Shown: positions 931 through 44,969 of the stretch, piece after piece
How positions within the stretch are numbered: position 1 is the stretch's first letter
Layout of the letters: every line of letters starts with the position of its first letter
Assembly: GCF_006345805.1 (NCBI RefSeq)
Contig: NW_021833844.1
Span: 1-46,514, forward strand
From: Octopus sinensis
Lineage: Eukaryota
Reading direction: 5' to 3'
DNA: 46,514 nucleotides
The notes under the pieces: model-generated
Databases searched by the model: none
Told to the model about the DNA's origin: nothing
Seen by the model: only the letters and a program-made list of their open reading frames with translations
Made by a program: the position numbers and the translations under genes

Positions 931-970
931 ATTCAGTCATTTGTATATGAAAAAAAATATTTAATCTATA

Positions 971-2577
971 CAGTCCGACCCCAAAATGGGGCAGACCCCA
1001 GGGGTGGGGCACCCTCGGATTTTGGGGCACCCCCGCAATTTGGGGCACTTTATTCCAAAAGTACATTTTGGCAGAAAAAAAATAAAAATCGATAAAAAAT
1101 TATGGAATTTTTGGGGCACCATAAAATCATTTATAAGGAATTAAAAATAAAATAAAATTATAATAAATTAATTATTTTTTGTTTTATTTTCAATTTATAT
1201 TTTTATTGTTGTGGTTATGGATTACGAAACTAAATTGAAGATTGCTAAAGAAATTTTGAAGAAAAATTTATCTGAGAGGCAACTAATGAAAAAGTACAAC
1301 ACAAGTAAAGGAACAATATCAAGAATAAAACGAAATATTGTACCTTTCTTGCAACACGGCAATACTATTTCTGAGGAATATGACACATTTAAAGCCGATA
1401 AAGATAAATTTGATGATCAAGTCTTTGAAATATTTCAAAGACTACGCGTAGATAAAATTCCGATTTCAGGCCCTATTTTGAAAAAAATTGCCTTAGTTAC
1501 AGCTTCAAAAATTGGATTTACTTCTTTTAAAGCTTCCAATGGGTGGCTTGATAGATTTAAATTGCGGCATGAACTTCAATTCAAGTCAATATGTGGTGAA
1601 AAAGCTTCATGTGATTTATCTTATGTGAAAAATTATTTTGAAAAATATGACCAGAAAGTATTAAAATATGGACCTGAGAATATATTTAATTGTGATGAAA
1701 CTGCGCTTTTTATAAAAAGAACTCCTCAAAAATCATTTGTTGAACAAGGCGAACCGTGTTTTGGTTATAAACAAGGGAAAGAAAGACTCACTGTTCTTCT
1801 ATGCTGCAGTTTAATCGGGGAAAAACTTAATCCATTGATTATTGGAAAATATAAAAAACCTCGGTGTCTAAAAAATTTTGATGTTCAAGATTTTGGGTTA
1901 TTGTATTCATCTTCTCAAAATGCATGGATGACTGGAAAGACTTTTATGAGTTGGCTTACACTTATAAATGAATCGTTTTGCAAAAACAACAGAAAAATAT
2001 TATTAATACTTGACAATGCGGGATGCCATAAAACTGCCGAATGTTCGAACATCGAATTTTTATTTTTGCCGAAAAATACAACGCCCTATTTACAACCTTT
2101 CAAAAGGATGGGAGAAAATAGATGCTAAAAGTATTGTTAATTGTTGGAAGAAAATCGACAGGAACCGTGATTCTTATGCAACAAAAAACTGTCTAACAGA
2201 TGAACATTTAGATCAAGTTGTTAACGAAACAATTGATGGAGAATGCGAAGACATGAACAATAATGTTTATGATACATATTCAGAAACCGAAAATAGTGAA
2301 AATGTCGTAGCAAAAACAAAAGATCTGCTTAACAATTTAGAAGAAAAAATTTCTAATGTTGCACCAAGTATGCTCCGAGATTTTTTTGATTTTCGGCTGA
2401 AATTGACGAACAATATCAGACAAAACTCTACAAATAAAAAGAAAATAACTGAATATTTTAGTAAAAATGTTTTTTGATGTTTATTAATGGTTTAATTTTT
2501 AAAAAAATAACAAACCCCTGTTTTTGGGGCACCCCCGCATTTTGGGGCACTTGGTGCCCCATTTGGGGGTCGGACTG
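971..2577 (+). mobile_element. pogo/Tigger DNA transposon, copy 1 (internally deleted)
   Basis: TIRs CAGTCCGACCCC...GGGGTCGGACTG, TA on both sides (969-970, 2578-2579), repeated subterminal TGGGGCAC motifs. Confidence 0.93.
1217..2128 (+). pseudogene. CENP-B/Tigger-type transposase, C-terminally broken
   Basis: HTH_Tnp_Tc5 motif FKASNGWLDRFK.RH, plus IFNCDETALF, AWMT and LILDNAGCH. QPLD is lost through a ~140-nt deletion relative to copy 2. The ATG at 1217 is preferred over the GTG at 1211. Confidence 0.85.
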
Positions 2578-2714
2578 TATTGTAAGTTAATGTTTCAAAT
2601 ATAAAATATTATTTAAATTGCAACAATGGTTATTCAGAAAATTTTTTAAAAAAATAAGAGAAAATTTGATAAATAATACGACTAAGAAAATAATAGTGTT
2701 TTAGAAGTTTCAAA

Positions 2715-6744: not shown

Positions 6745-7682
6745 TTAATAAATTGAAACAGCATATTTTCCATCATGGTTGGATAAATTTTATATTCAGA
6801 TTATACACGTAGAATTTCAAAATCAAAATTTTCAAACTTTTTTGGTTCAATATTAACTAATCCAATATAGTAATTGTAAAGAGATGACCAATATTCGCTT
6901 ATGGCTATAAAAATATTTATAGAATTGAGTTTTATATGCATCAAATTTACTATCCTTTTGCTCGCATTTTCTGCAATTGTCTTCGGAACTTAATGTTTCA
7001 TTACATTATCTCCTCTGTGTTCTAAGACCCCTAGATATCGGCAAACTTCTTTATCGAAGGATTCTTGATTGATTAAATTATATTCATACTCATAATTAAT
7101 ACACTGATTGATAAAAACTTACGTCATTTTTGCACTTGACATTTTTTATTTATTCCCAGTTATTGTCAGAAATAAGATTGAATGATTCCAGATAATCAGT
7201 TTATTTATCAAAACATTTTTAAAATAAATTGCAACGTTCTAATAGTCGATTTATGCGCAACCTGGAAATCAGAATAACGAGACAATGGACGAGATTTCTC
7301 TTCATTTGTATTTGCCATAATTTTCTGCACTGCAATAAGTATTGTTCAAGGCTGTTCAGAAAGTTGCGAACCCATCGTATTTTATATCGATTTTATGCTT
7401 TTGGTTCCAACCAAATATCTTTGCAAACAAAAAGTTTCATCATTGTTCAATTTGAAATTAGATCACCTTGCAAAACTGAATGTTGTACATGATATTCGGG
7501 TTTCTCTTTCGTCAAAGGATTTAGAAATAGAAATATTGGTTTTTGATAAACAGCATCATTCATCTTATTAATTAAATAATTTTTTTCTTTATTTTTGAAA
7601 ATCGATAAAGCGTATGAGAAAAATTATTAAGATGCCACAGGTACAATATGAAAAGAAATTAGGAGGCCACTGCAATACATGA

Positions 7683-7904
7683 TGAGTCATAATAATTTTG
7701 ACAGCGAATTACTCATAATATTTTTAAAAACAATGACAAATTTCAACTTATAAAAACATAGTTAACATCTAAAATAAGAAAAATTTACAATTAAAATATA
7801 ACTTTGCAGATAAACTCGAATAAAATTAAAAAAATCAATTTTAATCATATAATTTTAAATTGTAACAAAATCATATTTTACGCTATATATTATTGTTATA
7901 AATA
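7683..7904 (+). promoter_or_regulatory. Putative promoter of orphan gene copy A (TGAGTCA element and TATAAATA)
   Basis: TGAGTCA at 7683-7689 and TATAAATA at 7897-7904. Both are retained upstream of the paralog (19785-19791, 19889-19896). Confidence 0.45.
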
Positions 7905-7927
7905 GCAAATAATAATTAAACGGCAAA

Positions 7928-8203
7928 ATGGTGAGAAGATTTGCAAGCGATAATAATAATTTTCTATACAGACTTCGACAAGATATAGAAAATTCTGAAA
8001 ATAATGAATTTTTTGAAAATGAACATAATATTCTTCACCGGCTCCAGGATATTGACCATTGTTTGAACGAATATTTGGCAAATGAAGAGGAGCATATACT
8101 AAATGACAGTGGTGTAAGAAACAGAGTAGAACAATTAGATAAATTGTTGACGGAGAAAATCGATTTTTATATAAATCGATCTGCAAACAGAGACACTAAT
8201 TAA
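7928..8203 (+). CDS. Orphan acidic, Asn-rich 91-aa protein, copy A
   Basis: Intact ATG..TAA and paralogous to 19920-20228. Indels are in frame and many differences are synonymous. Confidence 0.75.
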   Translation: MVRRFASDNNNFLYRLRQDIENSENNEFFENEHNILHRLQDIDHCLNEYLANEEEHILNDSGVRNRVEQLDKLLTEKIDFYINRSANRDTN

Positions 8204-8960
8204 TTAGCTATAATGTTAATTTATTTGGATAATTTCTTATTAAATTTTTCAAACAATTTCTAAGTAGTCAAACCTCTCTAAATCGACCCCTCGTTATACT
8301 GAAATTACCTAAAAATCGGACTAAACTTCTGGTCCCAATTTACCTCATAGCCCATCACTGCTATTTAATCTTTGATATATCCGATCTCCTGTATTCCGAA
8401 TACTGTCTGTATTTTGTGGTCCCAATTTGAATTTTTTAATCATAAATCGCCAATCTGACATCAAACTTTGATTTAATCTTATTATTCGGTTTTAACCTTG
8501 AATTGAAAACAACAATAAAGATTTATATTGCGGACAACTCGACTGAAAATCAAGCTTACGTTGAAAATTGTTTTTAAAGAAGAAAATTTAAATAATAAAT
8601 GAATCAAACCAAACAAGTAAGAAACTATAAGTAAAAGGTAATCGCTAAAAGCAATAAGAGCTGAATCGAAGCTTAAAACAAGGCAAAACTCATATAAAAA
8701 TTTCTATTAGTTTTAATGTTTCACTTTTTCGTTGTAAGTAAATTTAATGACTTGCTTAATATACCGACCTACCCTCTATACCGGACAATTCTGTCAGTGC
8801 CGAGAGTAATCGGTTCGAAGGATATTGAAATCAACTACAGAACATTATAAAAATAAACTACCCATAAAAAATCCAATATAAAACAATAAATAAAGATTCA
8901 ACTTAAACCCACCGTCACCTGAGATTAAAAAAGCAAGATGGAAATTGTTTAGTCATATTA

Positions 8961-10373
8961 TGTGACATGGGCCAAATGATACGTATGGGATGCGCGTTAC
9001 ACTGACCTTCAAATAATGTTAATCTGTCAATTTATCGATAAACTTCAAACAATCTTATCTTATTATTGAATTATCAACTACAAAAATAATTAATTTAAGT
9101 AAGCTTTTTAATCCTGTCCATCCCGACTATAGATTTTTTCCCATTTGAGTTTGGTTGAATCTCTCTACAATCCCCTATGTCCGTGGATTGTTAGGTCTTC
9201 CGTGAATTTGTTTGATTTTAAAATCAAAACAAATTTTCTTTATTTCCTGCTTCTTAAACTCAGAAGAATTTGACATGGCCGAAAATTTTTTTAAGTCAAT
9301 AAGATCTATCTGAAACCGTTCATTAGGACAAGAAACAAAAACATGGTGATTTATATCTCCAATTTACAATAAAAAATGTTTATACTTTAAAGGACGTGAA
9401 AATTTACAGACTTGACAATTTCGAATTACTTTTCTGATTATTTCATTCTTTACAGTAAAGTAACTTTGTCGACACTGATATTCAATTTTATTCACTCCTC
9501 CGTGAGAATGCCCGTGCAATGTTTTTGCATTAAGCTCAATTTCAGATTCATTATCCAGAGTAATGACTAACTTGGGATCAGCGGATTTAAGATACAATCT
9601 GAAACTTAATGCGCATTCAAAATACCTTTCATTGATGATAGTAAAATTCTCTATTTTATTGGCAACCTTATATTTTTTGTGCCTCGAAAAATTTTCTGGA
9701 AATTTAGCAGCCAACGCATCCTTTAAAATCTCATATTCGATAATGTCTTATACAAAACCCTAGTAAGAACTCATTACAACAAGATAAAACAAGAAAAAAC
9801 ACGCTAGAAATGTAAGTTATCCAAGTTAAAAAATTAAAATCTTAATAATTGTAACAACAGTTTGGCAATTCGCCAGGCTACATATACATCCTAAACATAA
9901 TAATGGTTTTTAAGCCTTTGATTATCATTGTAACATTAATAAATTAAAGATTATTTAACATGTTTTTTTAAATTTCAGAACAATTTATTTCAGAAACGAG
10001 TTAATTATAAGACAGGCAAGTTTTCCGCGGCTGACGACAGCAAAAATTGCCAAATATTCTACAATCGGGGATTCGTACCGCTTTGTTCCTGTGGCAGTCG
10101 AGACTTCGGGTGTCACAGGAACTGTAACTGAGTCATTCCTTAAAGAAATCGGTCGAAAAATTGCTCATGTAAAAAACGATTGGAGGGAACCAACATGGCT
10201 TTGACAAAGAATAGGTTTGGCCGTTGTTCTCGGCAATGCCTATTCGATTATGTCGTCAGTCGCTCGTTCTTAACATGTTTGAAATCGATTCATTAATATA
10301 TTTGTTCACTATAAAAAATTAAATTTCGGCTAATCAAAGAATTCTAATTTGACAACGCGCGGCCCATGTCACA
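8961..10373 (-). mobile_element. Ginger/GIN (KRBA2-like integrase) DNA transposon, family A, decayed
   Basis: TIR TGTGACATGGGCC / GGCCCATGTCACA and 5-bp TSD TATTA. Minus strand encodes H..SH.G.....C..C, PNERFQIDLIDLKK and HGRPNNPRT. The paralogous module near 20430 lacks the insertion. Confidence 0.85.
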
Positions 10374-10873
10374 TATTATACGAAAGGATTCACAACTACT
10401 TTGATAGAAAATTACTTTCGTGAACCAATGAAGCGTCGGTTGTAGGTAATTAACACTATAAGAAATATGTTATAAAGTATGTAAAACAGTGAAATTTTAT
10501 TATTTTATAAAAACAATAAGCAGCGTTCCGCCAAATTAAAGGAGTTTGTGGACGATATGTCGAGGATGCCAAGAAGTACGAAAGCAAAAAAGTTTGAGAG
10601 CCACTGTTCTCGACTATGTTCGAATGCAAGTCGTAAAAAGGCGAAGTGGGAAAAGATAGCAAGAGGATATTCGAAATGCATAGTTTAAGCGAAACCCTTG
10701 TTGGGCTACGCGAAAAAGCGCTTTGTGTTCAACTAAATGAAACTAACTCCATTAAAATTATTTTTGGTGCAAGTAACTTTCAATATTAATTAAAAAAATA
10801 AATACAGCTTTAAACTTATGCTGAAAACAATTTTTCAATCAAATTAGTTCTTTTTAAACATATGTCTAGTCAA
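9920..10873 (+). repeat. ~950-bp near-identical direct duplication (partner 23621-24572)
   Basis: Identical by eye from GATTATCATTGTAAC to ATGTCTAGTCAA, apart from rare single-base indels. Confidence 0.95.
10020..10272 (+). mobile_element. CRE-like 3' fragment inside the Ginger-like element
   Basis: AADDSKIAKYS...YRFVPVAVETSGV...EPTWL*QRIGLAVVLGN, with a premature TGA. Confidence 0.8.
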
Positions 10874-13355: not shown

Positions 13356-13660
13356 TTTTAAATATGAAACACCCAACAAAGTTGAATATTTTCCAGAGAT
13401 CATTTATTTGTTGAGTAATTAAAAATATAATTTAGATATTCAATAACATTTAAATAATAATAAATAAAATTTTAATCGGCAACAATAGAGATTTTTTATC
13501 AGAATGAATTCGAATAGTAATTTTTTAAAATTAATTTTCGCTAAAATTAATTTAAAAATAAAAATCAATTTATATTAATATACATTTAATCGTTATATTT
13601 TAAAATTGTTTCTGGTTTACCTCAGAAAAATTGATTCCTGAATTATGTTTTGAGGTCAAC

Positions 13661-14568
13661 ATGATCTATTCTTATATGTCTAACTATGAAATAACTTTAG
13701 TATTGTGCTTATTTATATTTACTGGAGCTGTTTATACCATTCCGTACATTTTAACCAGAATTTTTTCTAGCTACAGCTCCACTTTAACTACGTTTAAACA
13801 GTATGGAACATGTTTTGTTAACGGAATTCTCGTAGCTCTGACCCTCGGAGTTTTATTTCCAGAAGGATTGGCCGAATATGAAAATATCTCCACCAAATGT
13901 TGGCCGTCTTTACATCAATGGAATATTTTTCCAATTTTTGTCATTTTCGTTTTGATGTTATCGATAATTATTAATGGATTAATGAAAAAGTCATCACTTG
14001 AAGAACACACGGGTCTTCTTCACGAATCACTTACGACACATCAAGGCTATGAGACAATCCTTCCAGAACCATCCGAACTGTCCGAAAACAATCAAAGTCG
14101 TTTGTCGGACTTTGTATCTATTTTTCTGGTTTTTACTCTCCACTCTTTGTTTGACGGTTTTACATTGGGTATACAACATGAAAAATTTACGTTATTTTTT
14201 GTCGCTACGATTGGGCATAAAATTTGCGTTTGCTTGGCTTTGGCCTGCAAAGCAGTTCCGCAAAAATTTTCTCATATTTGGCATTTTGTTTGTGGGGTTT
14301 TATTTTCATTTTCCACCCCTTTGGGTGTTTTTGTAACTCGGCAGGTTATGCATAGTTCTAGTGACTGTGGGAAGTCCGCCATATCTATGACAGTCTATAT
14401 CTTATCCTCGGGACTTTTATTGGATGTTTTATTTTTCCGAGAATTGCCTTCAAGTAGCCTGGTGTCTACTGATTCAACGAAGAGGACCTTTCTGCTCTGG
14501 CTAGTATATTAGGATCTGCGTTTTTATTTGGGACTGAGTGCATTGAGAATTATATTTCGAATAAATAG
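13661..14568 (+). CDS. ZIP (SLC39, ZIP1/2/3-like) metal transporter, intronless
   Basis: Multiple TM helices with LHSLFDGFTLG, IGHK and FSFSTPLG. The ORF stops at 14512, but one extra T in a T-run near 14490 would give a natural last helix (FSALASILGSAFLFG) ending at 14568. Confidence 0.85.
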
Positions 14569-14859: not shown

Positions 14860-15579
14860 TTATGTATATTTAATTAGCAGCAGAGGATAGATGGAATGGC
14901 AATTCCCACGCAAGATGTCTATTGATATGCGTTGGAAAAGCCATGTCCGTTCCCGATGATCATTTCTTCTTCTGCTTGCCAAATCCCCCAGTTTAATAAG
15001 GAATTTTTTAGTTCTGGGGCCGAGGACTCCCGATGTCTCCACTGCGATCGGGGCAAAGATGTGGTGGTGAGATAATGCACTGTATTTCTTGATTTTTAGC
15101 GTTTCGGCCAGGTTGGCTGCGGAGCCCGGCTCTGAAGCCAACGACAAGATGTTCCCGGCGGAGAAGGTATCCGTGCAAGTGGCGTCCCAGATGAGAGACT
15201 TGCCATTTTCAAATGGGAAGGTCGTTAGACCATCAGGACGTTTACCATCCTCCCGAGCCAGCCCGACCGGTTCCAGCTGTGAAGGGAATCCGGCAGTTTC
15301 CAGAGTCCGCTTGACTATGTCGTTCAGAGCCGTATGTCGAGGGAAGCGTCCGGGACTTCTTTGGCACGATAACGGGTGCAATCCAAAGGGGTCAACGGTC
15401 GATCCACAGCGACACCGGTGTTCCCGGCATACGTTCAGACCTAGGCGCAGTGATATGCCGATCCTCAGGCAATCATCGTCCAATAAGGTTCCAATAGAAC
15501 CCATTGGGATAGCGGTCAACCAAGCCCCCGAATATGGTTGTGAGGCAGCCAGTAAGCAAGCCAAGCAACCAGTAAGCAT
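14860..15579 (-). mobile_element. CRE-like non-LTR retrotransposon, 5'-truncated
   Basis: GAWL.AIP, CRCG..VD..G.H.LSC, RH..LND and RPDG motifs; near-identical to the 142-653 copy. Confidence 0.9.
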
Positions 15580-15926
15580 TGCATAATTATAATTTGTAAT
15601 TTTAAAATTGAATTATTTTTTCACATGTCATGAAATAGCGATGGATGTTGCTAATGAGGACGACGAATATATCGGAATCATGTCCGATTATGAAATATTT
15701 TAATGTCAAGAGATATTTCTTGTGAAGACGATGAGGACGATTCGGATAATTGCATAAGATTTTCCGTCGACAAATGTTATAGTTTTTAACTAAATTACCT
15801 CCTTTAAATCAAGTCCAAAAATTGAATTCAATTATTTTATTTTTATACGATTTCTGATCAATTTGAATTTTTTTAAAAATAATTTTTAAATTAAATATTT
15901 AAATAACTAGTTCTGGTCTGTTTGTC

Positions 15927-19040: not shown

Positions 19041-19919
19041 TGAGTTACTACAATATGTTATAAATATATTTATCAAAGAGCATGCTTATTTTTTAAAGTG
19101 AAAAAGTAACATTATACTATTCAAAAGTATAAAGTGTTTTTATATTTATCTAATCCTTAGACTTCAAGTTAGATTACTAAATGCCAGCTACTTACTTTGA
19201 TTTGTGTATTTTGCGTAGAATCGTTTATATACTCAGAAAAGATCGTAAATTAACGCCTTAAGTTAGTTCTATTTTTACTTTTGTATGTAGTCAATTTCAT
19301 TAAAACAATTGTTGATTTAAGTAATCAGATAAGTTAAATTAATTATTTTAATGAATGATATAATAAAGGATTCACTAAAAATATAAATTCATGCTGTTTG
19401 TATTAAATAAACTATTTAAATTACATTAATCCCAAGTACCTGATTCCCAATTTTTTGCAAAGTACTTTTGTTTTTAGGAAAATATGATAATCTAATATTT
19501 AGTATTTGAAGAAAAGTTTTAGTAGAATCGTATTTTTAGTTAATCTACAATATATATTTACTAAATTTTCTAATTTTGATAATTATTTCTAATTTATTTA
19601 ATTATTCAGGCAAGAAACATTAAAAAATGTTCAAAAGACTGTGCTGATTTTCGACTATTTCAAATATTTGAATAGAAAATACAAATTACATAAAGAAGAC
19701 GTAAAAGTTAAAAATTCCATTTAACTAATTATTTTCATTATCAATTTAACTATAATTAAAATTATCAAAGAAATTTATACACGATGAGTCATAATAATTT
19801 TGAAAACAAATGATTCATAATATTTTTAAATTCAATGACAAATTTTAGTTAATAAAAAATAGTCATATTCTCCGCTATATATTATTTTTATAAATAGCAA
19901 ATAATGAGTTAGCAGCAAA

Positions 19920-20228
19920 ATGGTGAGAAGGTTGCAAAACGAAAATAACAACAATGATAATAAATTTTTTGAGAATAATAGTTTTTTGGATAGACTTCGA
20001 CAAGAAATAGAAGATTTGGAGAATAATGAATTTTTTGAAAACGAAATTTATAATATTCTTCACCGGCTTCAGGATATTGACCATTGTTTGAACGAATATT
20101 TGGCAAACGAAGAGGAGCATATACTAAATGACAGTGGTGTAAAAAACAAAGTTGAACAGTTGGATCAATTGTTGACGGAGAAAATTGATCTGTATATAAA
20201 TCTATCTACAAACAGAGACACTAATTAA
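19920..20228 (+). CDS. Orphan acidic, Asn-rich 102-aa protein, copy B
   Basis: Paralog of 7928-8203; shares NILHRLQDIDHCLNEYLANEEEHILNDSGV exactly. Confidence 0.75.
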   Translation: MVRRLQNENNNNDNKFFENNSFLDRLRQEIEDLENNEFFENEIYNILHRLQDIDHCLNEYLANEEEHILNDSGVKNKVEQLDQLLTEKIDLYINLSTNRDTN

Positions 20229-21510
20229 TTAACTATAATTTAATTTATTTGGATAATTTCTTATTAAATTTTTCAAACAATTTCTTAGGTAATAGCATTT
20301 GAGCCAACTACGAGACCACATAAACATGAACTACTCAAAATAAAATCTAATATTAAACTATACAAATAGATTCAACTTAAACCTACTGCAAGCTGAGATT
20401 CAAGTAGCAAAATGGAGATTGGTTTGTCACATTCTACGAATAGATTCATAAGTCCGGCAAATATTGTGATTAAAAATTACTTTTAAAAAACAATGAAGCA
20501 TAGGTTTTAGGGAATAAAACACAATCATAAATATGTTTGAAATTCTGTAAAACTGGTGTAATTTTATTATCTTATAAAACAACAATTACTTGTTTTTTTT
20601 CTTGTGTTCTTTTGCTCCAACTGAATGTTCACTGATGACGGCGGGACATGTCAATCTTTTTAGCATTGTAGAACCTTCAGCCAAGTGAGCAGTTGCCACA
20701 TTCAAACCCGTGTCCTAAGTCTTTATTGGCCCGACACCTATCTCATGTGCACTTTGTTCCTACCTATTATTAGTTAAAAAGATCAATTAACTCTTCTTTA
20801 CTTAAAATAAACTCTGCCTATGCGGAGCTATAAAATACTATGGATTTGTGGAAATGGCCTTTATGTACAAAAAATACAACATGCTTTTAATGATAAAGCA
20901 CGTTCTATCATGTAGAGAAAGTTGTGCATTTTTCCAAATAAGAAATTTAATTTTCCCGACATTTTAAACTTTTTAAACTGAAAATCTACTGAACGAGTAT
21001 AAAAGTATAATGATTCGGAGATTTGTAGCTATTTATGTTCCAGGTAAAATTTTTAAAAAGTAAATTTGGCAAACAAATTATCATTATTGGTGATAAAGTA
21101 AATAAAGTTAAATTTTAACATTTTATTTAAAAATTAAATAAAAACTGTTTTTAACTATTTTTAAATATTCTATCTTTATATTCTAAAAAATAATACAGTT
21201 AAAAGGTCCAAAAAACTAAATAGTAAGATTATTTTTTTAACTATTTTTTTCGTAAGGATACATAAAGCATTTAACTGCTATTATTCCTTTTATGTTCTGT
21301 TTTGAGCTTTTTCAGTTGCTATAAATTGATTTATGACAAGATTTTTAATCCAAGCGGAGTTTATTTGTGATGCACAATCCCACTCAAATGAAGCTAATAA
21401 CAATTTGCAATTCACTTATGTAATTTTGCCCATAATCGTGGCTGCTGCATGTAGCACTAATTAGAGATAAGAAGTGGAACAAGGAATTATTAGAATAGAT
21501 AATTAGGCTA

Positions 21511-23615: not shown

Positions 23616-23620
23616 CAGCT

Positions 23621-24572
23621 GATTATCATTGTAACATTAATAAATTAAAGATTATTTAACATGTTTTTTTAAATTTCAGAACAATTTATTTCAGAAACGA
23701 GTTAATTATAAGACAGGCAAGTTTTCCGCGGCTGACGACAGCAAAAATTGCCAAATATTCTACAATCGGGATTCGTACCGCTTTGTTCCTGTGGCAGTCG
23801 AGACTTCGGGTGTCACAGGAACTGTAACTGAGTCATTCCTTAAAGAAATCGGTCGAAAAATTGCTCATGTAAAAAACGATTGGAGGGAACCAACATGGCT
23901 TTGACAAAGAATAGGTTGGCCGTTGTTCTCGGCAATGCCTATTCGATTATGTCGTCAGTCGCTCGTTCTTAACATGTTTGAAATCGATTCATTAATATAT
24001 TTGTTCACTATAAAAAATTAAATTTCGGCTAATCAAAGAATTCTAATTTGACAACGCGCGGCCCATGTCACATATTATACGAAAGGATTCACAACTACTT
24101 TGATAGAAAATTACTTTCGTGAACCAATGAAGCGTCGGTTGTAGGTAATTAACACTATAAGAAATATGTTATAAAGTATGTAAAACAGTGAAATTTTATT
24201 ATTTTATAAAAACAATAAGCAGCGTTCCGCCAAATTAAAGGAGTTTGTGGACGATATGTCGAGGATGCCAAGAAGTACGAAAGCAAAAAAGTTTGAGAGC
24301 CACTGTTCTCGACTATGTTCGAATGCAAGTCGTAAAAAGGCGAAGTGGGAAAAGATAGCAAGAGGATATTCGAAATGCATAGTTTAAGCGAAACCCTTGT
24401 TGGGCTACGCGAAAAAGCGCTTTGTGTTCAACTAAATGAAACTAACTCCATTAAAATTATTTTTGGTGCAAGTAACTTTCAATATTAATTAAAAAAATAA
24501 ATACAGCTTTAAACTTATGCTGAAAACAATTTTTCAATCAAATTAGTTCTTTTTAAACATATGTCTAGTCAA
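23621..24572 (+). repeat. Second copy of the ~950-bp duplication (CRE fragment, one Ginger-like TIR, flank)
   Basis: Matches 9920-10873 and includes GGCCCATGTCACA|TATTA at ~24060-24077. Confidence 0.95.
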
Positions 24573-25850: not shown

Positions 25851-26750
25851 TCAACCAAACCAAAAGAGATAGTTAAATGGGTTTATTAAATGGAAAAGGT
25901 AACCCAATGGAAAAAGAAACCCCAGGTTAAAAAAAGGCCTGCATTTTAATTTCAAATCTTTGTTATCAAGTTTGTACGCTTTCTTCAAGTAATAGAATTG
26001 CGTACAGTAGACTGTCGACAAATTGATAAACAGGCCGTTTTTAATCACCTCAAATTGTTTAAATCCCAATTTTTTTATTTTCGAATTCATATCTCCTAAT
26101 ATAACAACTGAATCGGATCCGGACCTACAATATCTTAGACAATGCAAATACAGGCTGTCTCCGCCAATATACTCCAAATTTTTAAAAAACTCAAGAGTTT
26201 GTAATTCATTGGGAACGGAAAAGAGGATGAATCCAGTCACTGCCTGGATCCAACTTAAATATTTCAGGTTCTCGATTCGAATAGTTCTATTTATAGTAAT
26301 TTGCAATCATTACTCTTTAGGCATTATGTAAAGACTTCCGATTACGACAGAACAACGCTCAAATTGTTTGATGTTCGAATTGGTGATTGCAATTTTATCA
26401 TCCACGATTTCACAAACTATTTTTTGTAAATAAAGACATTTCTAAACTATAAAAGTTGTTGAAAAGGTTCATTTTTATTGCGAGTCCGCCCATTAATACT
26501 TCCCGTTGTCCACATTCCCACTCATTTTCACAATAGTAAATTATTTGTTCTGTGAAAATTGTTGTCATCAAAAAACTTTTAGCAAGTGTAGCGCCACATG
26601 GATATTCTGTGAACCTAACTCGCTCTTCCCCAGAATCCAGCGTGAATTTCTTGTTTTAAAACATTCTATGTATAAATAATAAGTAAATTTCTACCTTGTG
26701 AATTCACAATAAAAACCAGTGAGCTTACAATCGCTAAATAACCGAGCATT
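25851..26750 (-). CDS. Receptor L-domain protein (EGFR/insulin-receptor-like ectodomain segment), partial
   Basis: FERCSVVIGSLYI^...L.YL..I..VTGFI....L.TLEFFKNLEYIGG..LY...LGF, with Cys-containing upstream exons and tiny introns. Boundaries unresolved; no kinase domain in the window. Confidence 0.65.
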
Positions 26751-29779: not shown

Positions 29780-32700
29780 CAGGGGTCACCAAACTTTTTG
29801 CACTCGCGGGCCGGATTGACCCCAACACAATGAACGCGGGCCGGAGCACGTGCATAGGATTATAATTTTACTAGAAATTCATAAGTGTGTTTTTTACAAA
29901 AAAAACTACAGTCCGACCCCCAAATGGGCACCAAGTGCCCCAAAATGCGGGGGTGCCCCAAAAACAGGGGTTTGTTATTTTTTTAAAATTAAACCATTAA
30001 TAATAACACATCAAAAAACATTTTTACTAAAATATTCAGTTATTTTCTTTTTATTTGTAGAGTTTGTCTGATATTGTTCGTCAATTTCAGCCGAAAATCA
30101 AAAAAATCTCGGAGCATACTTGGTGCAACATTAGAAATTTTTTCTTCTAAATTGTTAAGCAGATCTTTTGTTTTGCTACGACATTTTCACTATTTTCGGT
30201 TTCTGAATATGTATCATAAACATTATTGTTCATGTTTTCGCATTCTCCATCAATTGTTTCGTTAACAACTTGATCTAAATGTTCATCTGTTAGACAGTTT
30301 TTGTTGCATAAGAATCACGGTTCCTGTCGATTTTCTTCCAACAATTAACAAACTTTAGCATCTATTTCTCCCATCCTTTGAAATTAGCATCATAACCTGA
30401 CGCAAATTTAATTTACCAATAGAATGTGTGTAAAATCGTTTCGAAATCTTGAAAACATAAAAATTCCATAAGAAAGAGGAATAATAAATCTTTAAAAATC
30501 TTGATTATTCCCATATCCAAAGGTTGTAAATAGGGCGTTGTATTTTCGGCAAAAATAAAATTCGATGTTCGAACATTCGGCAGTTTTATGGCATCCCGCA
30601 TTGTCAAGTATTAATAATATTTTTCTGTTGTTTTTGCAAAACGATTCATTATAAGTGTAAGCCAACTCAAAAGTCTTTCCAGTCATCCATGCATTTTGAG
30701 AAGATGAATTACAATAACCCAAAATCTGAAACATCAAAATTTTTTAGACACCGAGGTTTTTTATATTTCCAATAATCAATGGATTAAGTTTTCCCCGATT
30801 AAAACTGCAGCATAGAAGAACAGTGAGTCTTTCTTTCCCTTGGTTTATAACCAAAACACGGTTCGCTTGTTCAACAAATGATTTTGAGGAGTTCTTTTTA
30901 TAAAAAGCGCAGTTTCATCACAATTAAATATATTCTCAGGTCCATATTTAATACTTTCTGGTCATATCTTTCAAAATAATTTTTCACATAAGATAAATCA
31001 CATGAAGCTTTTTCACCACATATGACTTGAATTGAAGTTCATGCCGCAAATTTAATTATCAAGCCACCCATTGGAAGCTTTAAAAGAAGTAAATCCAATT
31101 TTGAAGCTGTAACTAAGGCAATTTTTTTCAAATAGGGCCTGAAATCGGAATTTTATCTACGCGTAGTCTTTGAAATATTTCAAAGACTGATCATCAAATT
31201 TATCTTTATCGGCTTTAAAGTGTCATATTCCTCAGAATAGTATTGCCGTGTGTGCAAGAAAGGTACAATATTCGTTTTATTTTGATATTGTTCCTTTACT
31301 TGTGTTGTACTTTTTCATTAGTTGCCTCTCAGATAAATTTTTCTTCAAAATTTCTTTAGCAATCTTCAATTTAGTTTCGTAATCAATAAACAAACAATAA
31401 AATTAAATTGAAATAAAACAAAAAATAATTATTATTATAATTTATTTTTTTAATTTTTTCCTTAAATGATTTTATGGTGCCCAAAAAATTCCATAATTTT
31501 TTATCGATTTTTATTTTTTTCTGCCAAAATGTACTTTGGAATAAAGTGCCCCAAAATTGCGGGGGTGCCACAAATCCGAGGGTGCCCCAACCCGGGTCTG
31601 CCCCATTTGGGGTCGGACTGTAATTTAACAAAAATAAAGTAAAACAAAAATTTAATGAGAGCTATGGAACTGTGATTTTTTTGATAAGTTCATCAATATT
31701 TGGTTTTAAATTGCTGCATCCTATCATGAGAATTGATTTTAAGTGTCCGTCAGTCAATCTTGCACGATGGGCAGACTTTAACAATATTCATCCTCGAAAA
31801 CGTTTGCTCACATTGGTAAGTTGTGCCAAATATAGAAAATATCTTTATCGCACAAATCTTTAGTCTCGGAAACTCATCATCTTGAGATATTCGTAGAACT
31901 CAGCGAGTTTGGTCCGTCTGTGACAATCTTTGAGCTGTTCATTTGATTGTAAGTCAATAACTTCTAATGTAATTCATGTTGAACATTTTCACATTACAAA
32001 AAATGGATTTTCGAACAAAATTATATCGCTTTCAATTTTGTCAAGTTCAGAAAAACTTATGTAAAAAATGATTTTTAATTCTTTGATAATTCCAATTTGG
32101 AAAGTAATGTCGATCTCATTACAGTTTGCCTCACAAAAACTTTTAAAACAAGAAAAGTGTGTGAAAAATGACGTACTCAAGTTGTGACTCGAATAACATC
32201 AATTTTTGTCGAAATGCTTTAATTATCCTGTAGAAATCACAAATTAAGTTTCCTTTCCTTGTAATTTCAGATTAGCTCATTCATGTGAGTTGTAACATCA
32301 ACAAAAAATGATAATTTTGATAGCCAAGCAAGATCTGATAATTCGGGATAATAGTTATTTTTACTGGTTAGAAAATATCAATCTCACTTCGGAGTTTATA
32401 AAATCTATTTAATACATTACCACAGCTAAGCCATCTAACTGCAGTGTAATATGGTAAGTCAAAATATTCAGATCCAAAATCGTCAAGTAAAACTTTAAAT
32501 GACGGTGATTAAGTGAGCTCCCTCGAACAAAGTTTATTATGCGAATAACTGGATTCAACACACATGAAATATTAAGAGCCTTCGCACATAGTGCGTGCTG
32601 ATGAAGGATGAAATGAATGAACAAAGTGTTTGAAATATGTAATTCCTCCATTTATTAGTTATTTGCCCAACTAGACCCTTTTTAGAACCAGCCATATTCT

Positions 32701-34979: not shown

Positions 34980-37433
34980 TGTGACATGGGCGGCTGGATA
35001 CGATGGGAAACCGGTTACATTTTTGACCTTGTGATGTCAATTATTAATCATTGAATAACTTCAAAGAATAATGCATTTTAAAAAAAAATTAAAATTAATC
35101 CTTTTTTTAGTCTTGCCATTGGTACCCTCCATATCCCTCCTTTAGCATTTTATATTTAAAAAAATGATTGATTTGCCTCAACTCGATTATTGATAAAATG
35201 TTAATTATTTCAGCCCCGGATAGAAAGGAGACTCGAATCTATCCATCCCCTTGTACGGGGATTGTTTGGTCTTCCATGTATCTGAACTAGATTAAACTCT
35301 TCGCATAGATCTCTCAGAGACACATTCTTGAATTCTGAACCATTATCCGATTGCAAAATTTTGCAAGGTCCATATAGGTAGAAAAGTGATCTCAGGTTGC
35401 TGCATACTTCTTTTGAAGATTTATGAAAAAGTGGTCTAACAAATGCAAATCTGAATAAATTGTTGAGAGACCTACTACCAACCTACTATAAACATCGATG
35501 ACTGTTAAAATCCATTTGTAATTATTATTTACGACTGAAAACTTTTTTAGATCTACAAGATCTAGCTGAAACCTTTCATTCGGAGAAGAAGCAAAAATAT
35601 GATGTTTGGATCATCAGATTTTAGATAAAATCTGCGCATTAATCGAAATATAGAGTACCTTTCATTGATTATTGTAAAATTGCCCGTAAGAATTTGTCGC
35701 CTCTGAATATTTGGTATTTGGATGATTGTACTATGGGTGGTCCGCCCGATATTTTGATAAAGGACTTGGAATCTCTAATCCCAGCTTTGTCATCCATTGG
35801 TCTCGAAATCAATTCTCTTAAATCTGAAATCGTAAATGTTAACATCGATCGTGTTAGTTTTCAATACATTTTTTCTCAGTTTCGAGGCCTTTTGCCCGAT
35901 CTGAGACATACTTCCACTGCCGATCTCGAAATCTTGGGTGCTCCGATCTACGACCAATCCGCCATCCGTATTCTTAATTCCAAGAGGAATGCCCTTTCTT
36001 CCCTTGTGATAAACTTGCAGATATTGATCCCCACCTGCTTATTTCATTCTCAAAAATTATCTTCTGGATCCCGAAAATCAATTATGTCCTAAGGATTCCC
36101 GCTGCTTTTATATTCCTTTGCCTTGGATTCTTCGACGCTCTAGTGCGTTCTTCCGCTGAGAAGATTTTTAATGTCAAGTTTGATGACGTTGGTTGGTGTC
36201 AGGCCAAACTTCCTGTATCCTTTGGCGGTCTGGGGCTTCGCTCCGCGCTCGACCTTTCTCTTCCCGCTTTCCTTTCATCTTCTTCAGGATTGTATCTTTC
36301 TTGTCCATAAGATTCTTGAAAAATCACCCGAATCAACTTTGGACTCTGATATCAATTCTGCACTCTTGCTTTGGAAGGAAAAGGATTTCGTCTTACCGTC
36401 AGAACGATCTCTCCAACGTGAATGGGACAAAATTATTTGTGAATATTACGTTGACTCGTTGGAGCGTCTCTTGGACCAGCACAGACTAGCTTGCTTCCGT
36501 GCCAGTCGCCAACCGTATTCTGGCTCCTGGCTTAACTGCCTTCCCACGACCCATTTGGATACCTGCCTCGACTCCGATGCCCTCCGTTTTGGAATATGCC
36601 TTCGTCTCGGACTACCGATTTGTAATCCCCACCCCTGCCGGTGTGGATCAACGATGGACACATACGGGCTCCATGCCCTTTCCTGCAAAAAGCGCAGGTC
36701 GCATGCCTCGTCATTCGGCTCTTAACAAAGATCATTCTCCATGCCCTCGAAAAGGCAGGGTATCTTTCTGTCCTTGAGCCAATTGGTCTGACCGTGGTGA
36801 TTGAAAAAGGCCTTATGGCTCGACGTTGTTCGCTTCGCGACGCTGGGTAAACCACTAGTTTGGGATGCCACTGTGTTGATTCCTTCTCTAAGTCGGCCAT
36901 CAACGAATCCGCCTCTCTGCCCGGGTCCCGTGCTAATAGGGCTGAACATACAAAATCCGAAAAATACCAGGGCTTGTTAGACGGCTTTGGTTTTGGCCAA
37001 TTGTTGTTGAGACTTCGTGCGTCTTTGGCACAAAGCAGTTGATCATCTGAAGAAACTTGGCCACCTCTGTTCTTTACGCTCCAAGGATCCTAGGGAATTT
37101 ACATTCCTAATCCAAAGGATCCTGTTGGCCGTTGTGCGTGGGAACAGCTGTTCCATCCGGCTTGCTGGCCGATTAATTTCTGATTAATTTAACTTTCCAT
37201 ATTTTTAATAATATTTAATCTTAAAAAAAGGTTTACCAACATTTAAAAAAATAACTTTTTAAAATTATTTAAGTACACGAACAAAAACTAATTTAAATCA
37301 ATACAAGGCATAGTTAAACTTTATAATTGGCCCCTAAAATATTATTTGTGATAATCAAAGGATTTAATTTTGACATCTACAAGGTCAAAAAATGTAACCG
37401 GTTGCCCATGCGTAACGCGTTGCCCATGTCACA
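34980..37433 (-). mobile_element. Ginger/GIN-like transposon, family A, carrying a CRE-like insertion
   Basis: ~70-bp imperfect TIRs starting TGTGACATGGGC and 5-bp TSD TAATC. Integrase core PNERFQLDLVDLKK, LTVIDVYSR^FAF, LQSDNGSEF and HGRPNNPRT; intron at 35451-35482. Confidence 0.9.
35690..37175 (+). mobile_element. CRE-like retrotransposon, longest fragment (RT YLDD through RLE), frameshifted
   Basis: NIWYLDDCTMGG, ILGAPI, LP...GGLG, GSWLNCLP, CRCG...D.YGLHALSC and RHSALN. Confidence 0.88.
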
Positions 37434-43380: not shown

Positions 43381-43636
43381 CTAGACCGTGCGTCGACATA
43401 AATATGGCCATCCGTGCAGTGAACGTAAGCCTTAATAAGAAGGAGGTTGTTGATTTAATAAAATAAATCAAATTACGATAAACACAAATTAACATATTAA
43501 TTAAAATTTTTTTGACGAAATATTAGATTAATCCCATTAAGATTAAATTTTAATCTATAAAAAAATTTTTAAACACTTTATTTATTAATAATATTTAAAT
43601 TAATATATAAAATTTAAATATATTTTAATAATTAAA

Positions 43637-44969
43637 ATGGTTTTTTGTTGCAATTAAAAGATTAAGGCTTTTGAGAGAAAAGACATTAAACTCCCAAAAT
43701 AAAATTCCCGAAAGAATTCTTTACGAAAAACACACAAACTTCATAGCAGAATATGGAAGAGATACCGATTATTTTGTAAACACATTGCAACAAATACCTT
43801 TAGGATATAATGTCTCTCAATCTATTAGAATGAATGGAATTTATTGGTCTTTAACTGCTCTTGATCTCATGGACAAATTAGAAACCATTCCTCGCAATGA
43901 AATAATCAAATTTATAACCACGTGCTTTCAAAAATCGGGAGGATTCTCACCTTATCCTGACCACGAAGCACACTTGTTGTCTACTCTTAGTGCAATACAG
44001 GTCGTTTATCTGTTTTGTTATTATAGATATTAATTATATATGATTCAATTCATTTATTTGATATTGAAGCTATTGCTTCATATGTATCTAGTCTTCAATG
44101 TGAGGATGGCAGCTTTAGTGGGGACGAATGGGGTACGCACCACATGAGTACCTAATATAATACATTTTATTTTTAATTATATATATTAATTATATATTTA
44201 ATATTATAATATTTAGGAGAAGCTGATACAAGATTAACATTTTGCGGAGTCGCCTCTCTTTCATTGATTGTCATTTTGATATTGACAAACATATAGGGTA
44301 AGGTACACCTGGTCAACAGGTCTTCTACTATAAACTACGTCCTGTCCTGTCGTAACTTTGATGGAGGGTTTGGATCTCTCCCCGGGAGTGAGTCACACTC
44401 AGGCCAGGTTATATATTATAATAATAATTATTTTTAAATAACTTTTTAATTGTAATAAATTTATTAACATAATTAGATTTATTGTTGTTTAGCCACTTTG
44501 GCCATTTTGAAGGGATTACATCATGTGGATACAAGCTCATTGGCTTCTTGGCTGCAGTCTCGACAGTTGCCTTCAGGGGGACTGAATGGTTGGGGGATTT
44601 TGACTAATTCAAGGGAGGCCAGAGAAGATGCCGGATATTTGTTATTCCTGGTGGGTATTGGCATCTCTGAGTATAATTGGTCGAATGGAATGGATTGATA
44701 AGGTGTAGACTGATGGATGAAGGTTTGTAGAGATCTCTCCGTGATTTTATTCTTTCCTCTCAAGATGAAGAACTAGGAGGCATTGCTGACATTCCTGGGG
44801 ATGTTGTGAGTCGTGTTGTGACTAGTTGTAGCCTGATCCTTATCATACATTATTCGGGTTGGCAGGTCTAGCTCTTTTGGAGGAAGAGGGACTTAAAAAG
44901 GTCAATCCAATCTACTGTATGCCACAATATATTGTGGATAAAATTGAAATTGAGTGCTATTATCTATAA
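43637..44969 (+). CDS. RABGGTB: Rab geranylgeranyltransferase beta subunit, 9 exons
   Basis: [16 protein letters not shown]^IL, DGSF.GDEWG^[21 protein letters not shown]^[14 protein letters not shown]^RPEK.PD.CYSWW and DPYHTLFG. Introns 27, 26, 84, 27, 69, 25, 28 and 26 nt. One extra base in a homopolymer near 43690. Confidence 0.96.

What the first reader, a model, noticed from the sequence alone, without database searches (positions are those of the whole stretch)
7677..8260. Duplicated orphan-gene module under apparent purifying selection with a shared promoter
Seen: intronless ORFs 7928-8203 and 19920-20228 differ by about 10 synonymous changes, several conservative replacements (D/E, R/K, F/L) and in-frame indels only (11 codons net), with an invariant 30-aa core. 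Both keep TGAGTCA, a degenerate second copy of it about 20 bp later, and TATAAATA about 30 bp before the ATG. The protein is acidic, Asn-rich and probably helical, with an internal repeat (FFENN.FL.RL.Q.I / FFENE..NILHRLQDI). Known: TGA(C/G)TCA is the AP-1/bZIP site. Inference: a lineage-specific, possibly inducible family spreading as a cassette of about 800 bp. This is the best candidate for a novel system in the window.
Basis: partly seen in the sequence, partly recalled or inferred. Interest (0 to 1): 0.75.

Follow-up and report, generated by a model that had tools for sequence, protein, structure and literature searches.

The report
Orphan family of small acidic proteins
The two look-alike short genes are real members of a family of about 21 copies, known only from this animal genome, that encode small acidic two-helix proteins with a shared compact promoter; the family grew by local duplication rather than by jumping, and its function is still unknown.

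Summary
ORFs 7928-8203 (91 aa) and 19920-20228 (102 aa) are paralogues: 32 base differences (15 synonymous), in-frame indels only, an invariant 30-aa core. Both keep TGAGTCA, a degenerate second copy, and TATAAATA 31 nt before the ATG.

They belong to a larger family: 21 places on 12 contigs, 16 with intact ORFs, in three subtypes (A/B, D, E) lying in same-strand tandem arrays. All keep one layout:
- a gap-free 66-bp upstream module (TGAGTCA, TTACTCAT, AATGACA);
- an indel-tolerant spacer;
- TATAAATAG 29-31 nt before ATGGTG;
- a 74-102-codon intronless ORF;
- AATAAA/ATTAAA 35 nt after the stop.

No homologue was found by any sequence, profile or fold search. AlphaFold gives a confident antiparallel helical hairpin (pLDDT 87).

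Purifying selection is clear for A versus B (dN/dS 0.19, P=0.005) and for frame retention across subtypes. It is absent among recent D/E copies (omega about 1), and five copies are disabled.

There are no terminal repeats or constant TE or viral neighbours, and homology runs past the poly(A) signal. So this is tandem or segmental duplication, not a mobile cassette.

Verdict: a lineage-restricted, weakly constrained small-protein family, plausibly bZIP/AP-1-inducible. Moderate interest.

The parts
7681..7746 (+). Gene A: distal conserved upstream module, 66 bp and gap-free in every lineage. Holds three bZIP-type sites.
   Evidence: 75% identical between A/B and D/E with no indels, against 53-54% in adjacent blocks. 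The composite pattern occurs once per family locus.
7683..7689 (+). TGAGTCA (consensus TRE/AP-1 heptamer, within ATGAGTCAT)
   Evidence: conserved position in A, B, D and E
7709..7716 (+). TTACTCAT, a one-mismatch TRE-like site 26 bp downstream of the first
   Evidence: B has TGATTCAT at the same place.
7732..7738 (+). AATGACA half-site, third element of the module
7747..7850 (+). Variable spacer between the distal module and the core promoter. Mostly absent from B, and independently deleted in copy E_C12462a.
7851..7905 (+). Proximal conserved block ending in TATAAATAG (TATAAATA = 7897-7904). Putative core promoter.
   Evidence: The nonamer's core ATAAATAG is invariant in 17 of the 19 copies that keep the promoter (one has ATAGATAG, one is disrupted); spacing from the first T to the ATG is 29-31 nt in 18. 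The 18-mer is unique to the two genes in the window.
7928..8203 (+). Gene A ORF: 91 aa, acidic (pI 4.85), intronless
8239..8244 (+). ATTAAA poly(A) signal, 36 nt after the stop
   Evidence: AATAAA or ATTAAA at +30 to +36 in 20 of 21 copies
8204..8264 (+). 3' UTR and 3' flank shared with B and with pseudogene C
8265..8831 (.). 567-bp insertion specific to A's 3' flank, with possible 8-bp target duplication AGTARTC. Not part of the gene.
8832..8959 (+). Continuation of the 3' flank shared with B (20305-20433) and C, beyond the poly(A) site
   Evidence: 78% identity
19783..19848 (+). Gene B: distal conserved module. TGAGTCA 19785-19791, TGATTCA 19811-19817, AATGACA 19834-19840.
19889..19896 (+). 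Gene B: TATAAATA, 31 nt before the ATG
19920..20228 (+). Gene B ORF: 102 aa, pI 4.42. Carries the full internal FFEN..L.RL.Q.I repeat.
20263..20268 (+). Gene B: ATTAAA, 35 nt after the stop
20229..20433 (+). Gene B: 3' UTR and flank homologous to A and to pseudogene C

Best explanation
The two ORFs are members of a lineage-restricted multigene family of small (74-102 aa), acidic, Asn/Glu/Ile/Leu-rich proteins without a signal peptide.

Shown:
- At least 21 places in this 2.7-Gb animal genome, 16 with intact ORFs.
- The family expanded by tandem and segmental DNA duplication (birth-and-death evolution), not by transposition.
- Each copy is a very compact, intronless unit: a 66-bp upstream module with three AP-1/bZIP-type sites, a spacer that tolerates deletions, an invariant TATAAATAG 29-31 nt before ATGGTG, the ORF, and AAUAAA/AUUAAA 35 nt after the stop.

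Predicted: the protein folds as an antiparallel amphipathic helical hairpin. A/B have a third helix made by an internal duplication.

Inferred:
- RNA polymerase II starts within a few nucleotides of the ATG. This would give an mRNA of about 300-380 nt with an extremely short leader.
- The upstream module makes transcription responsive to bZIP factors (AP-1/Jun-Fos- or CNC-type), that is to stress, injury or infection signals.
- The protein acts stoichiometrically in the cytosol or nucleus by coiled-coil binding to itself or to a partner, not as an enzyme.
- Weak and uneven constraint on the protein, combined with a well-kept promoter, fits an inducible, fast-evolving effector or modulator.
For: Family and layout:
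- Searches find 21 places on 12 contigs, with same-strand E-to-D pairs 2 kb apart on four contigs and A-to-B 12 kb apart in the window.
- TATA-to-ATG spacing of 29-31 nt is. The poly(A) signal at a fixed +35 is.

Coding:
- A versus B has dN/dS 0.19. It has 15 synonymous changes where 8.5 +/- 2.2 are expected, P=0.0046.
- Between subtypes dS exceeds 1, yet the frame stays open. Random placement of the same substitutions gives a stop in 98-99.9% of trials.
- All indels are in frame.

Core promoter reading:
- Upstream ATGs occur in the spacer (2-3 in D/E). One lies between the TATA and the start codon in B and E, which argues that these stretches are not in the mRNA.
- The one copy with a disrupted TATA also has a premature stop.

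Fold: AF2 on D type gives pLDDT 87 and pTM 0.66, with helices 11-44 and 50-76. Both helices are amphipathic (P=0.006 and 0.003). The best fold matches are designed helical-hairpin dimers at TM 0.78, with no significant E-value.

Orphan status: Pfam none; 5.8-billion word search none; HMM profile against 1.84 billion representatives none; PDB profile none; BFVD and PDB folds none; IMG/VR and metagenome scans none.

Not mobile.
Against: - No expression data of any kind. The transcription start, inducibility and existence of the protein are all inferred.
- Within the D/E subtypes omega is about 1 and coding divergence equals flank divergence.
- Five of 21 copies are disabled, so many copies may be drifting.
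- A leader of only 0-8 nt is unusual for animal mRNAs and is expected to favour leaky scanning (PMC3177215).
- TGAGTCA is not enriched in the window as such.
- Databases leave out this genome and possibly its close relatives (notes). 'Orphan' therefore means no relative beyond that circle.
Copy number is a lower bound and wider context could not be fetched.
Confidence: 0.6

Rival explanations
1. Alternative gene model. The TRE-like module plus the A/T-rich ATAAAAA just after it is the proximal promoter. The 45-195-nt spacer is an outron or 5' leader that is removed. The conserved TTATTATAAATAG / CAG next to the ATG is a (trans-)splice acceptor region rather than a TATA box.
For: - The spacer tolerates two independent large deletions and carries upstream ATGs, as an outron would.
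- yUnAy-like branch sequences (TCTCAC, TTTTAC) sit about 45 nt before the ATG (alignment).
- AP-1 sites usually lie within about 100 bp of a start site (general knowledge).
- The nearest relatives of a LINE in the window come from a marine metagenome and from arthropods. Several marine invertebrate groups trans-splice (general knowledge).
Against: - TATAAATAG matches the TATA consensus in 18 of the 19 copies that keep the promoter, far stricter than an acceptor tract needs.
- The tract just before CAG is purine-rich (AAAAAACAG).
- Gene A and D_C8919 lack the CAG.
- No conserved GT donor follows the module, and 44 nt in B is too short for a cis intron.
- ATAAAAA is not conserved in D.
Confidence: 0.2
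2. Mostly non-functional DNA: a recently amplified segment whose open frames persist by youth and AT-rich composition. Any coding function was lost, or never existed, in most copies.
For: - Omega is about 1.2 in D+E and not different from 1.
- Coding divergence is about equal to flank divergence in recent pairs.
- Five disabled copies: one frameshift, a stop in both copies of pseudogene C, one premature stop with a damaged TATA, one lost ATG.
- An antisense frame is also open in A/B/C, which shows how easily such composition gives ORFs.
Against: - A versus B has a significant synonymous excess and a 3rd-position bias of 8/6/18.
- A/B versus D/E have dS above 1 with the frame, start context, length and stop position all kept. 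Fewer than 2% of random substitution sets avoid stops.
- Indels are all multiples of three.
- The promoter and poly(A) signal are kept at fixed distances.
Confidence: 0.12
3. A mobile cassette: an accessory ORF of a transposon or virus, or a retrocopy, that spreads as a discrete unit of about 800 bp.
For: - Multiple dispersed copies on 12 contigs.
- Intronless.
- TE debris lies near every copy.
Against: - No terminal inverted or direct repeats and no target duplications at the homology ends.
- Homology includes the promoter and runs more than 200 bp past the poly(A) signal, so this is not a retrocopy.
- Copies sit in same-orientation tandem arrays.
- Flanking TE fragments are different families at different loci.
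- No relative in IMG/VR, BFVD or Pfam.
Confidence: 0.06

Closest known systems
Taxonomically restricted (orphan) small-protein gene families in tandem clusters that are stress- or immune-induced, for example Drosophila Turandot and Bomanin genes (recalled from general knowledge, not tested here)
   Same: Short intronless or nearly intronless genes in same-strand clusters. Lineage-restricted, with birth-and-death turnover, compact promoters carrying stress-pathway sites, and fast protein evolution.
   Different: Those families encode secreted peptides with signal sequences. These proteins start MV(K/R/Q)R and have no hydrophobic leader, so they should stay inside the cell. There is no sequence similarity, and induction is not shown here.
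AP-1/TRE-driven TATA promoters of immediate-early and stress genes (TGA(C/G)TCA bound by Jun/Fos-type bZIP dimers; general knowledge)
   Same: A consensus TGAGTCA, often as palindromic ATGAGTCAT, plus two TRE-like sites spaced 25-26 bp apart. These are conserved across paralogues whose synonymous sites are saturated, and lie upstream of a consensus TATA box.
   Different: The module sits about 230-290 bp (110-135 bp in B) from the TATA box rather than within about 100 bp. Binding and inducibility are untested. The heptamer is not over-represented in the window.
TISU-type mRNAs with very short 5' UTRs (PMC2518114, PMC3177215)
   Same: The predicted leader is only a few nucleotides, with a strong start context (A at -3, G at +4; CAAAATGGTG against SAASATGGCGGC).
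   Different: TISU genes are described in mammals. According to general knowledge they are TATA-less housekeeping genes; here a TATA box is the most conserved element. The match to the TISU consensus is partial. The start site is not mapped.
Designed helical-hairpin heterodimers (DHD131, PDB 6dkm) and natural antiparallel coiled-coil hairpins
   Same: Predicted fold: two long amphipathic helices joined by a short loop. TM-score 0.78, rmsd 1.7 A over 68 residues.
   Different: Foldseek E=0.58, so this is a shared fold class only with no implied ancestry or function. The oligomeric state is unknown.

Membership tests
Protein-coding gene under purifying selection | Excess of synonymous over non-synonymous change (dN/dS below 1) between copies | tested here: met
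   A versus B: dN 0.078, dS 0.405, ratio 0.19. 15 synonymous changes against 8.5 expected, P=0.0046. A/B versus D/E: ratio 0.23-0.45.
Protein-coding gene under purifying selection | The same constraint holds across the whole family | tested here: not met
   GY+F3X4 gives omega 0.70 for the family (P=0.04 against 1), 1.22 for D+E, 1.45 for E and 0.81 for D, the last three not different from 1. Coding divergence is about equal to flank divergence in recent pairs.
Protein-coding gene under purifying selection | Reading frame kept open over saturated divergence; indels in multiples of three | tested here: met
   No stops, where 98-99.9% of randomised substitution sets create one. All indels are in frame.
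Orphan / taxonomically restricted gene family | No detectable homologue outside the lineage by sequence, profile or fold | tested here: met
   Searches are all negative. Caveat: the window's genome and possibly near relatives are left out of the libraries, so the breadth of the lineage is unknown.
Transposable element or viral cassette | Discrete ends with terminal repeats and target-site duplications | tested here: not met
   Only weak AT-rich inverted matches, none at the homology ends. Homology decays gradually.
Transposable element or viral cassette | Constant linkage to transposase, RT or viral genes, or similarity to viral proteins | tested here: not met
   Different TE debris at different loci. 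IMG/VR scan and BFVD fold search negative.
Processed retrocopy | Homology confined to the transcript, with a poly(A) tract at the 3' end and no promoter copied | tested here: not met
   Promoter modules are copied. The flank shared by A, B and C continues more than 200 bp past ATTAAA, with no A-tract.
AP-1/TRE-regulated promoter | Consensus TGA(C/G)TCA at a conserved position upstream of the core promoter | tested here: met
   TGAGTCA at the same column in A, B, D and E. It is lost only where the upstream DNA was replaced (D_C8919/D_C12580, D_C12597, E_C12597) or by a point change (E_C12468, TAAGTCA).
AP-1/TRE-regulated promoter | Binding by Jun/Fos-type bZIP factors and stimulus-dependent transcription | not testable with these tools
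   Needs EMSA or ChIP, reporter assays and RNA-seq time courses.
TATA-box RNA polymerase II core promoter | TATAWAWR about 25-31 bp upstream of the transcription start | tested here: inconclusive
   TATAAATA is near-invariant (18 of 19 promoter-bearing copies) and lies 29-31 nt before the ATG, with a CA dinucleotide 3-5 nt before the ATG in most copies. The start site itself is not mapped.
BAG domain / MED7 / other helical Pfam or PDB families | Significant profile match | tested here: not met
   Best PDB profile hits are MED7 E=0.11 and BAG1 E=0.19. Best Pfam hits have E of 0.01 or more, all below the curated cut-offs and inconsistent between members.
Secreted peptide family (AMP- or Turandot-like) | N-terminal signal peptide | tested here: not met
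   The N-termini MVRRLQNENNN and MVKRIPTPNNNENN are polar, with no hydrophobic stretch. This was judged by eye; no predictor was run.

The most novel reading that the evidence does not exclude
This is a previously undescribed class of intracellular, stimulus-induced coiled-coil hairpin proteins. They would be made from near-leaderless mRNAs that a conserved triple bZIP-site enhancer switches on. They would evolve under episodic diversifying selection (E versus E': 27 non-synonymous and 3 synonymous changes). That would make them a lineage-specific effector or decoy in a conflict such as antiviral or anti-transposon defence, or a feedback inhibitor of the bZIP factors that induce it.
Probability: 0.15. 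Interest if true: 0.55.

Novelty: new member of a known kind. Interest (0 to 1): 0.33.

Why it matters
If expressed, the family would be a clean, compact case for studying how lineage-specific genes arise and turn over. It offers about 21 dated copies with one promoter design, a regulatory module that is better conserved than the protein, and an unusually tight TATA-to-ATG spacing that implies almost leaderless animal mRNAs.

It would also give the host's annotators some 16 short genes that gene predictors probably miss. It does not by itself open a long-standing question. Without expression or interaction data the function stays conjectural.

Tried and rejected
Searches that found nothing:
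- Homology: Pfam on single proteins and on all members; 5.8-billion-protein word search; HMM profile against 1.84 billion representatives; PDB profile; exact-protein look-ups; IMG/VR and metagenome scans.
- Fold searches of both models against PDB and BFVD: only generic helical matches with E above 0.5.
- Rfam and tRNA scans of the window: nothing.
- Literature searches for the assembly size and for comparable families: uninformative.

Ideas considered and rejected:
- Pol III snRNA-type promoter (DSE, PSE, TATA). Rejected because T-runs inside the ORF would terminate Pol III after 50-80 nt, while the ORF is conserved.
- Alternative or antisense reading frames as the real gene. The sense +1 frame has early stops. 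The antisense ORF is open only in A/B/C, and the 8/6/18 codon-position pattern fits the sense frame.
- A cis intron between the module and the TATA. There is no conserved donor, and only 44 nt separate them in B.
- The 955-bp, 99.8%-identical direct repeats at 9919-10873 and 23620-24572 as LTRs enclosing gene B. They are 5'-truncated LINE tails inserted independently.

Host identity: the ZIP gene gave no hits. A LINE fragment's nearest relatives are marine-metagenome and arthropod sequences. The species was not identified.

Full report
**The observation**

- The DNA is 81.5% identical over 449 nt, with two further homologous blocks.
- Over 273 aligned coding bases there are 32 differences: 15 synonymous and 17 non-synonymous, at codon positions 8/6/18.
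- The only indels are 10 and 1 codons.
- A 30-residue stretch, NILHRLQDIDHCLNEYLANEEEHILNDSGV, is invariant.
- TGAGTCA lies at 7683 and 19785. A degenerate second copy (TTACTCA / TGATTCA) lies 26 bp further on. TATAAATA sits with its first T 31 nt before the ATG in both genes.
- The proteins are acidic (pI 4.4-4.9) and 16-19% Asn.
- The internal FFEN..L.RL.Q.I repeat has modest statistical support. It coincides with a 22-residue segment that only A/B possess.

Only the '10 synonymous changes' (15 in fact) and the '800-bp cassette' need correcting.

**It is a family, not a pair**

Six-frame searches of the whole assembly with B-, E- and D-type proteins found 21 places on 12 contigs. There are three subtypes.

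| Subtype | Where | Length | Features |
|---|---|---|---|
| A/B | the window, near-identical copies on C9684 and C10883, and a 5'-truncated pseudogene 'C' on C10703/C10288 | 91-102 aa | third helix from an internal duplication |
| E | other contigs | 77-78 aa | MVQRIPTPEN...NRNNN |
| D | other contigs | 74-77 aa | ...IGNRI |

- A/B are 37-44% identical to D/E, yet start, frame, length and stop position correspond.
- E-to-D pairs lie 2 kb apart on the same strand on four contigs. C12462 carries four copies. A and B lie 12 kb apart on the same strand.
- Several locus pairs are 95-99% identical over kilobases and are alleles or very recent duplicates. The number of distinct loci per haploid genome is perhaps 10-12.
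- Sixteen copies are intact. Five are disabled by a frameshift, stops, or a lost ATG.

**One gene design throughout**

Aligning 420 bp upstream of all copies shows the following.

- A 66-bp distal module is gap-free in every lineage: ATGAGTCA(C/T)AA...AAATTACTCATAATAT...AATGACA(A/T)ATT. It is 75% identical between A/B and D/E, against 53-54% in the neighbouring blocks.
- A spacer follows that has suffered two independent large deletions (in B and in E_C12462a), each leaving both flanking blocks intact.
- A proximal block ends in TATAAATAG (unchanged in 17 of the 19 promoter-bearing copies), 29-31 nt before ATGGTG in 18 of them.
- The one copy whose TATA is disrupted also has a premature stop.
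- AATAAA or ATTAAA lies 30-36 nt after the stop in 20 of 21 copies.
- In the D/E subtypes the 300 bp upstream is better conserved than the coding sequence. Between E and E' it differs at 9% of sites, against 24% at first codon positions and 28% in the 3' flank.
- TGAGTCA by itself is not enriched in the window. The evidence is positional conservation across paralogues whose synonymous sites are saturated.

**Is it coding?**

Yes, but constraint is uneven.

- A versus B gives dN/dS 0.19. A randomisation that keeps the substitution spectrum gives P=0.0046 for the synonymous excess, and 84% of random sets create a stop.
- Between subtypes dS exceeds 1, dN/dS is 0.23-0.45, and 98-99.9% of random sets create stops where none is seen.
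- A codon model, however, gives omega 0.70 for the whole family (P=0.04 against 1) and 1.2 for D+E. Recent pairs diverge as much in the coding sequence as in the flanks.
- One comparison (E versus E') has 27 non-synonymous and 3 synonymous changes, at codon positions 19/9/2. After controlling for the mutation spectrum this is only marginal.
- No other frame explains this. The sense +1 frame has early stops. The antisense ORF (7896-8186) is open only in A/B/C and does not fit the codon-position pattern.

The picture is birth-and-death evolution with weak purifying selection and possibly episodic diversification.

**Not a mobile cassette**

- Homology between A and B covers A 7675-7762, 7851-8264 and 8832-8959, matching B 19777-20433. 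A carries a private 567-bp insertion at 8265-8831.
- The shared 3' flank, also present in pseudogene C, continues more than 200 bp beyond the poly(A) signal, and the promoter is copied. A retrocopy is therefore excluded.
- No terminal repeats or target duplications mark the ends.
- Upstream homology fades gradually.
- The TE fragments around the 20 loci examined are of different kinds (LINE, Tc1, hAT, pogo).
- Only two copies exist in the window.
- The other repeats in the window are ordinary TE copies.

**Relatives and fold**

- Nothing was found in Pfam, the 5.8-billion-protein word search, an HMM profile search of 1.84 billion representatives, PDB sequences (best MED7 E=0.11, BAG1 E=0.19), IMG/VR or metagenome contigs.
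- The libraries leave out the window's own genome and perhaps near relatives.
- AlphaFold2 on the B type is mediocre (pLDDT 63, three helices). On the D type with 16 sequences it is confident (pLDDT 87, pTM 0.66): an antiparallel hairpin of helices 11-44 and 50-76. Both helices are amphipathic.
- Foldseek finds only generic hairpins. The best is a designed heterodimer module, at TM 0.78 and E=0.58.

**How it probably works**

Shown: the compact conserved layout, the coding frame, and the tandem mode of expansion.

Inferred:
- The TATAAATAG block is the core promoter, so transcripts would start within about 0-8 nt of the ATG. Upstream ATGs in the spacer, and between the TATA and the start in B and E, support the idea that those stretches are not in the mRNA. 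Such short leaders normally promote leaky scanning (PMC3177215). The start context (A at -3, G at +4) is strong and partly resembles TISU (PMC2518114).
- The three TRE-like sites make the genes responsive to AP-1- or CNC-type bZIP factors.
- The product is an intracellular coiled-coil hairpin that works by binding itself or a partner.

An alternative gene model cannot be excluded without transcript data, and I give it about 0.2. In it the promoter lies at the module, the spacer is an outron, and there is an acceptor at TAG/CAG.

**Host and surroundings**

- The window carries TE debris and animal genes: a ZIP transporter ORF, a receptor L-domain exon and a prenyltransferase-beta exon.
- A LINE tail's nearest relatives (70% identity) come from a Tara Oceans marine metagenome. 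The named hits are arthropods.
- The species was not identified.
Copy number is therefore a lower bound and wider synteny could not be examined.

**Verdict**

This is a real, previously unannotatable, lineage-restricted family of small acidic helical-hairpin proteins with a strikingly conserved promoter design. It expanded by local duplication and is only weakly constrained. It is a new member of a familiar kind (orphan small-protein families), not a new system. Interest is moderate to low (0.33) until expression or interaction data exist.

Noticed in passing
window 9919-10873 and 23620-24572: Two 955-bp direct repeats, 99.8% identical and 13.7 kb apart, bracket the ZIP gene and gene B. They carry a LINE C-terminal ORF fragment and have unrelated flanks. 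They look like two young 5'-truncated LINE insertions, not LTRs. An older fragment of the same repeat lies at 20425-20586, just after gene B's shared flank.
   Followed up: partly
window 7896-8186 (-); L001, L002, L005, L006: An antisense ORF of 96-108 aa overlaps the gene in the A/B/C subtype only. It stays open even in pseudogene C, where the sense frame has a stop. The codon-position pattern of A-B differences (8/6/18) fits the sense frame, so it is probably a by-product of composition.
   Followed up: partly
E_C8591 (L014) versus E_C12462b (L020): These two E-type paralogues differ at 30 coding sites, at codon positions 19/9/2 (27 non-synonymous, 3 synonymous; dN/dS 2.2). Their 300-bp promoters differ at only 9% of sites. 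This may reflect diversifying selection, but it is only marginal after controlling for the mutation spectrum.
   Followed up: partly
window 13604-14512 (+): A single-exon ZIP zinc-transporter-like ORF (Pfam Zip, E=6e-15) found no relative at E<=1e-5 in the 5.8-billion-protein word search. It is either very divergent or its relatives are masked.
   Followed up: partly
window 969-2579 and 29907-31622: Two pogo/Tigger-type DNA transposon copies (DDE_1 plus HTH_Tnp_Tc5) in inverted orientation, 95-97% identical. Both appear frameshifted.
   Followed up: no
window 8265-8831: A 567-bp insertion private to gene A's 3' flank, bounded by AAGTAGTC and GAGTAATC (a possible 8-bp target duplication). It contains an 87-bp-spaced internal repeat, TTYTGGTCCCAATTT.
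   Followed up: partly
L017 (G000:C12471, E-type copy): This copy has both a rearranged TATA block (TTATTAAATAGCAAAAAATAGC) and a premature stop at codon 3. Promoter and ORF decay together, as expected if both matter.
   Followed up: no
window 14860-15612 (-), 86-653, 35643-36725: LINE C-terminal fragments. Their closest database relatives (70% aa) come from a Tara Oceans marine metagenome. The named hits are arthropods (Orchesella, Nymphon, Bicyclus), a hint that the host is a marine invertebrate, possibly an arthropod.
   Followed up: partly
window 25851-26306 (-) and 43632-44033 (+): Host-gene exons: a receptor L-domain (EGFR/insulin-receptor-type) exon and a prenyltransferase beta-subunit exon. 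Gene models were not reconstructed.
   Followed up: no
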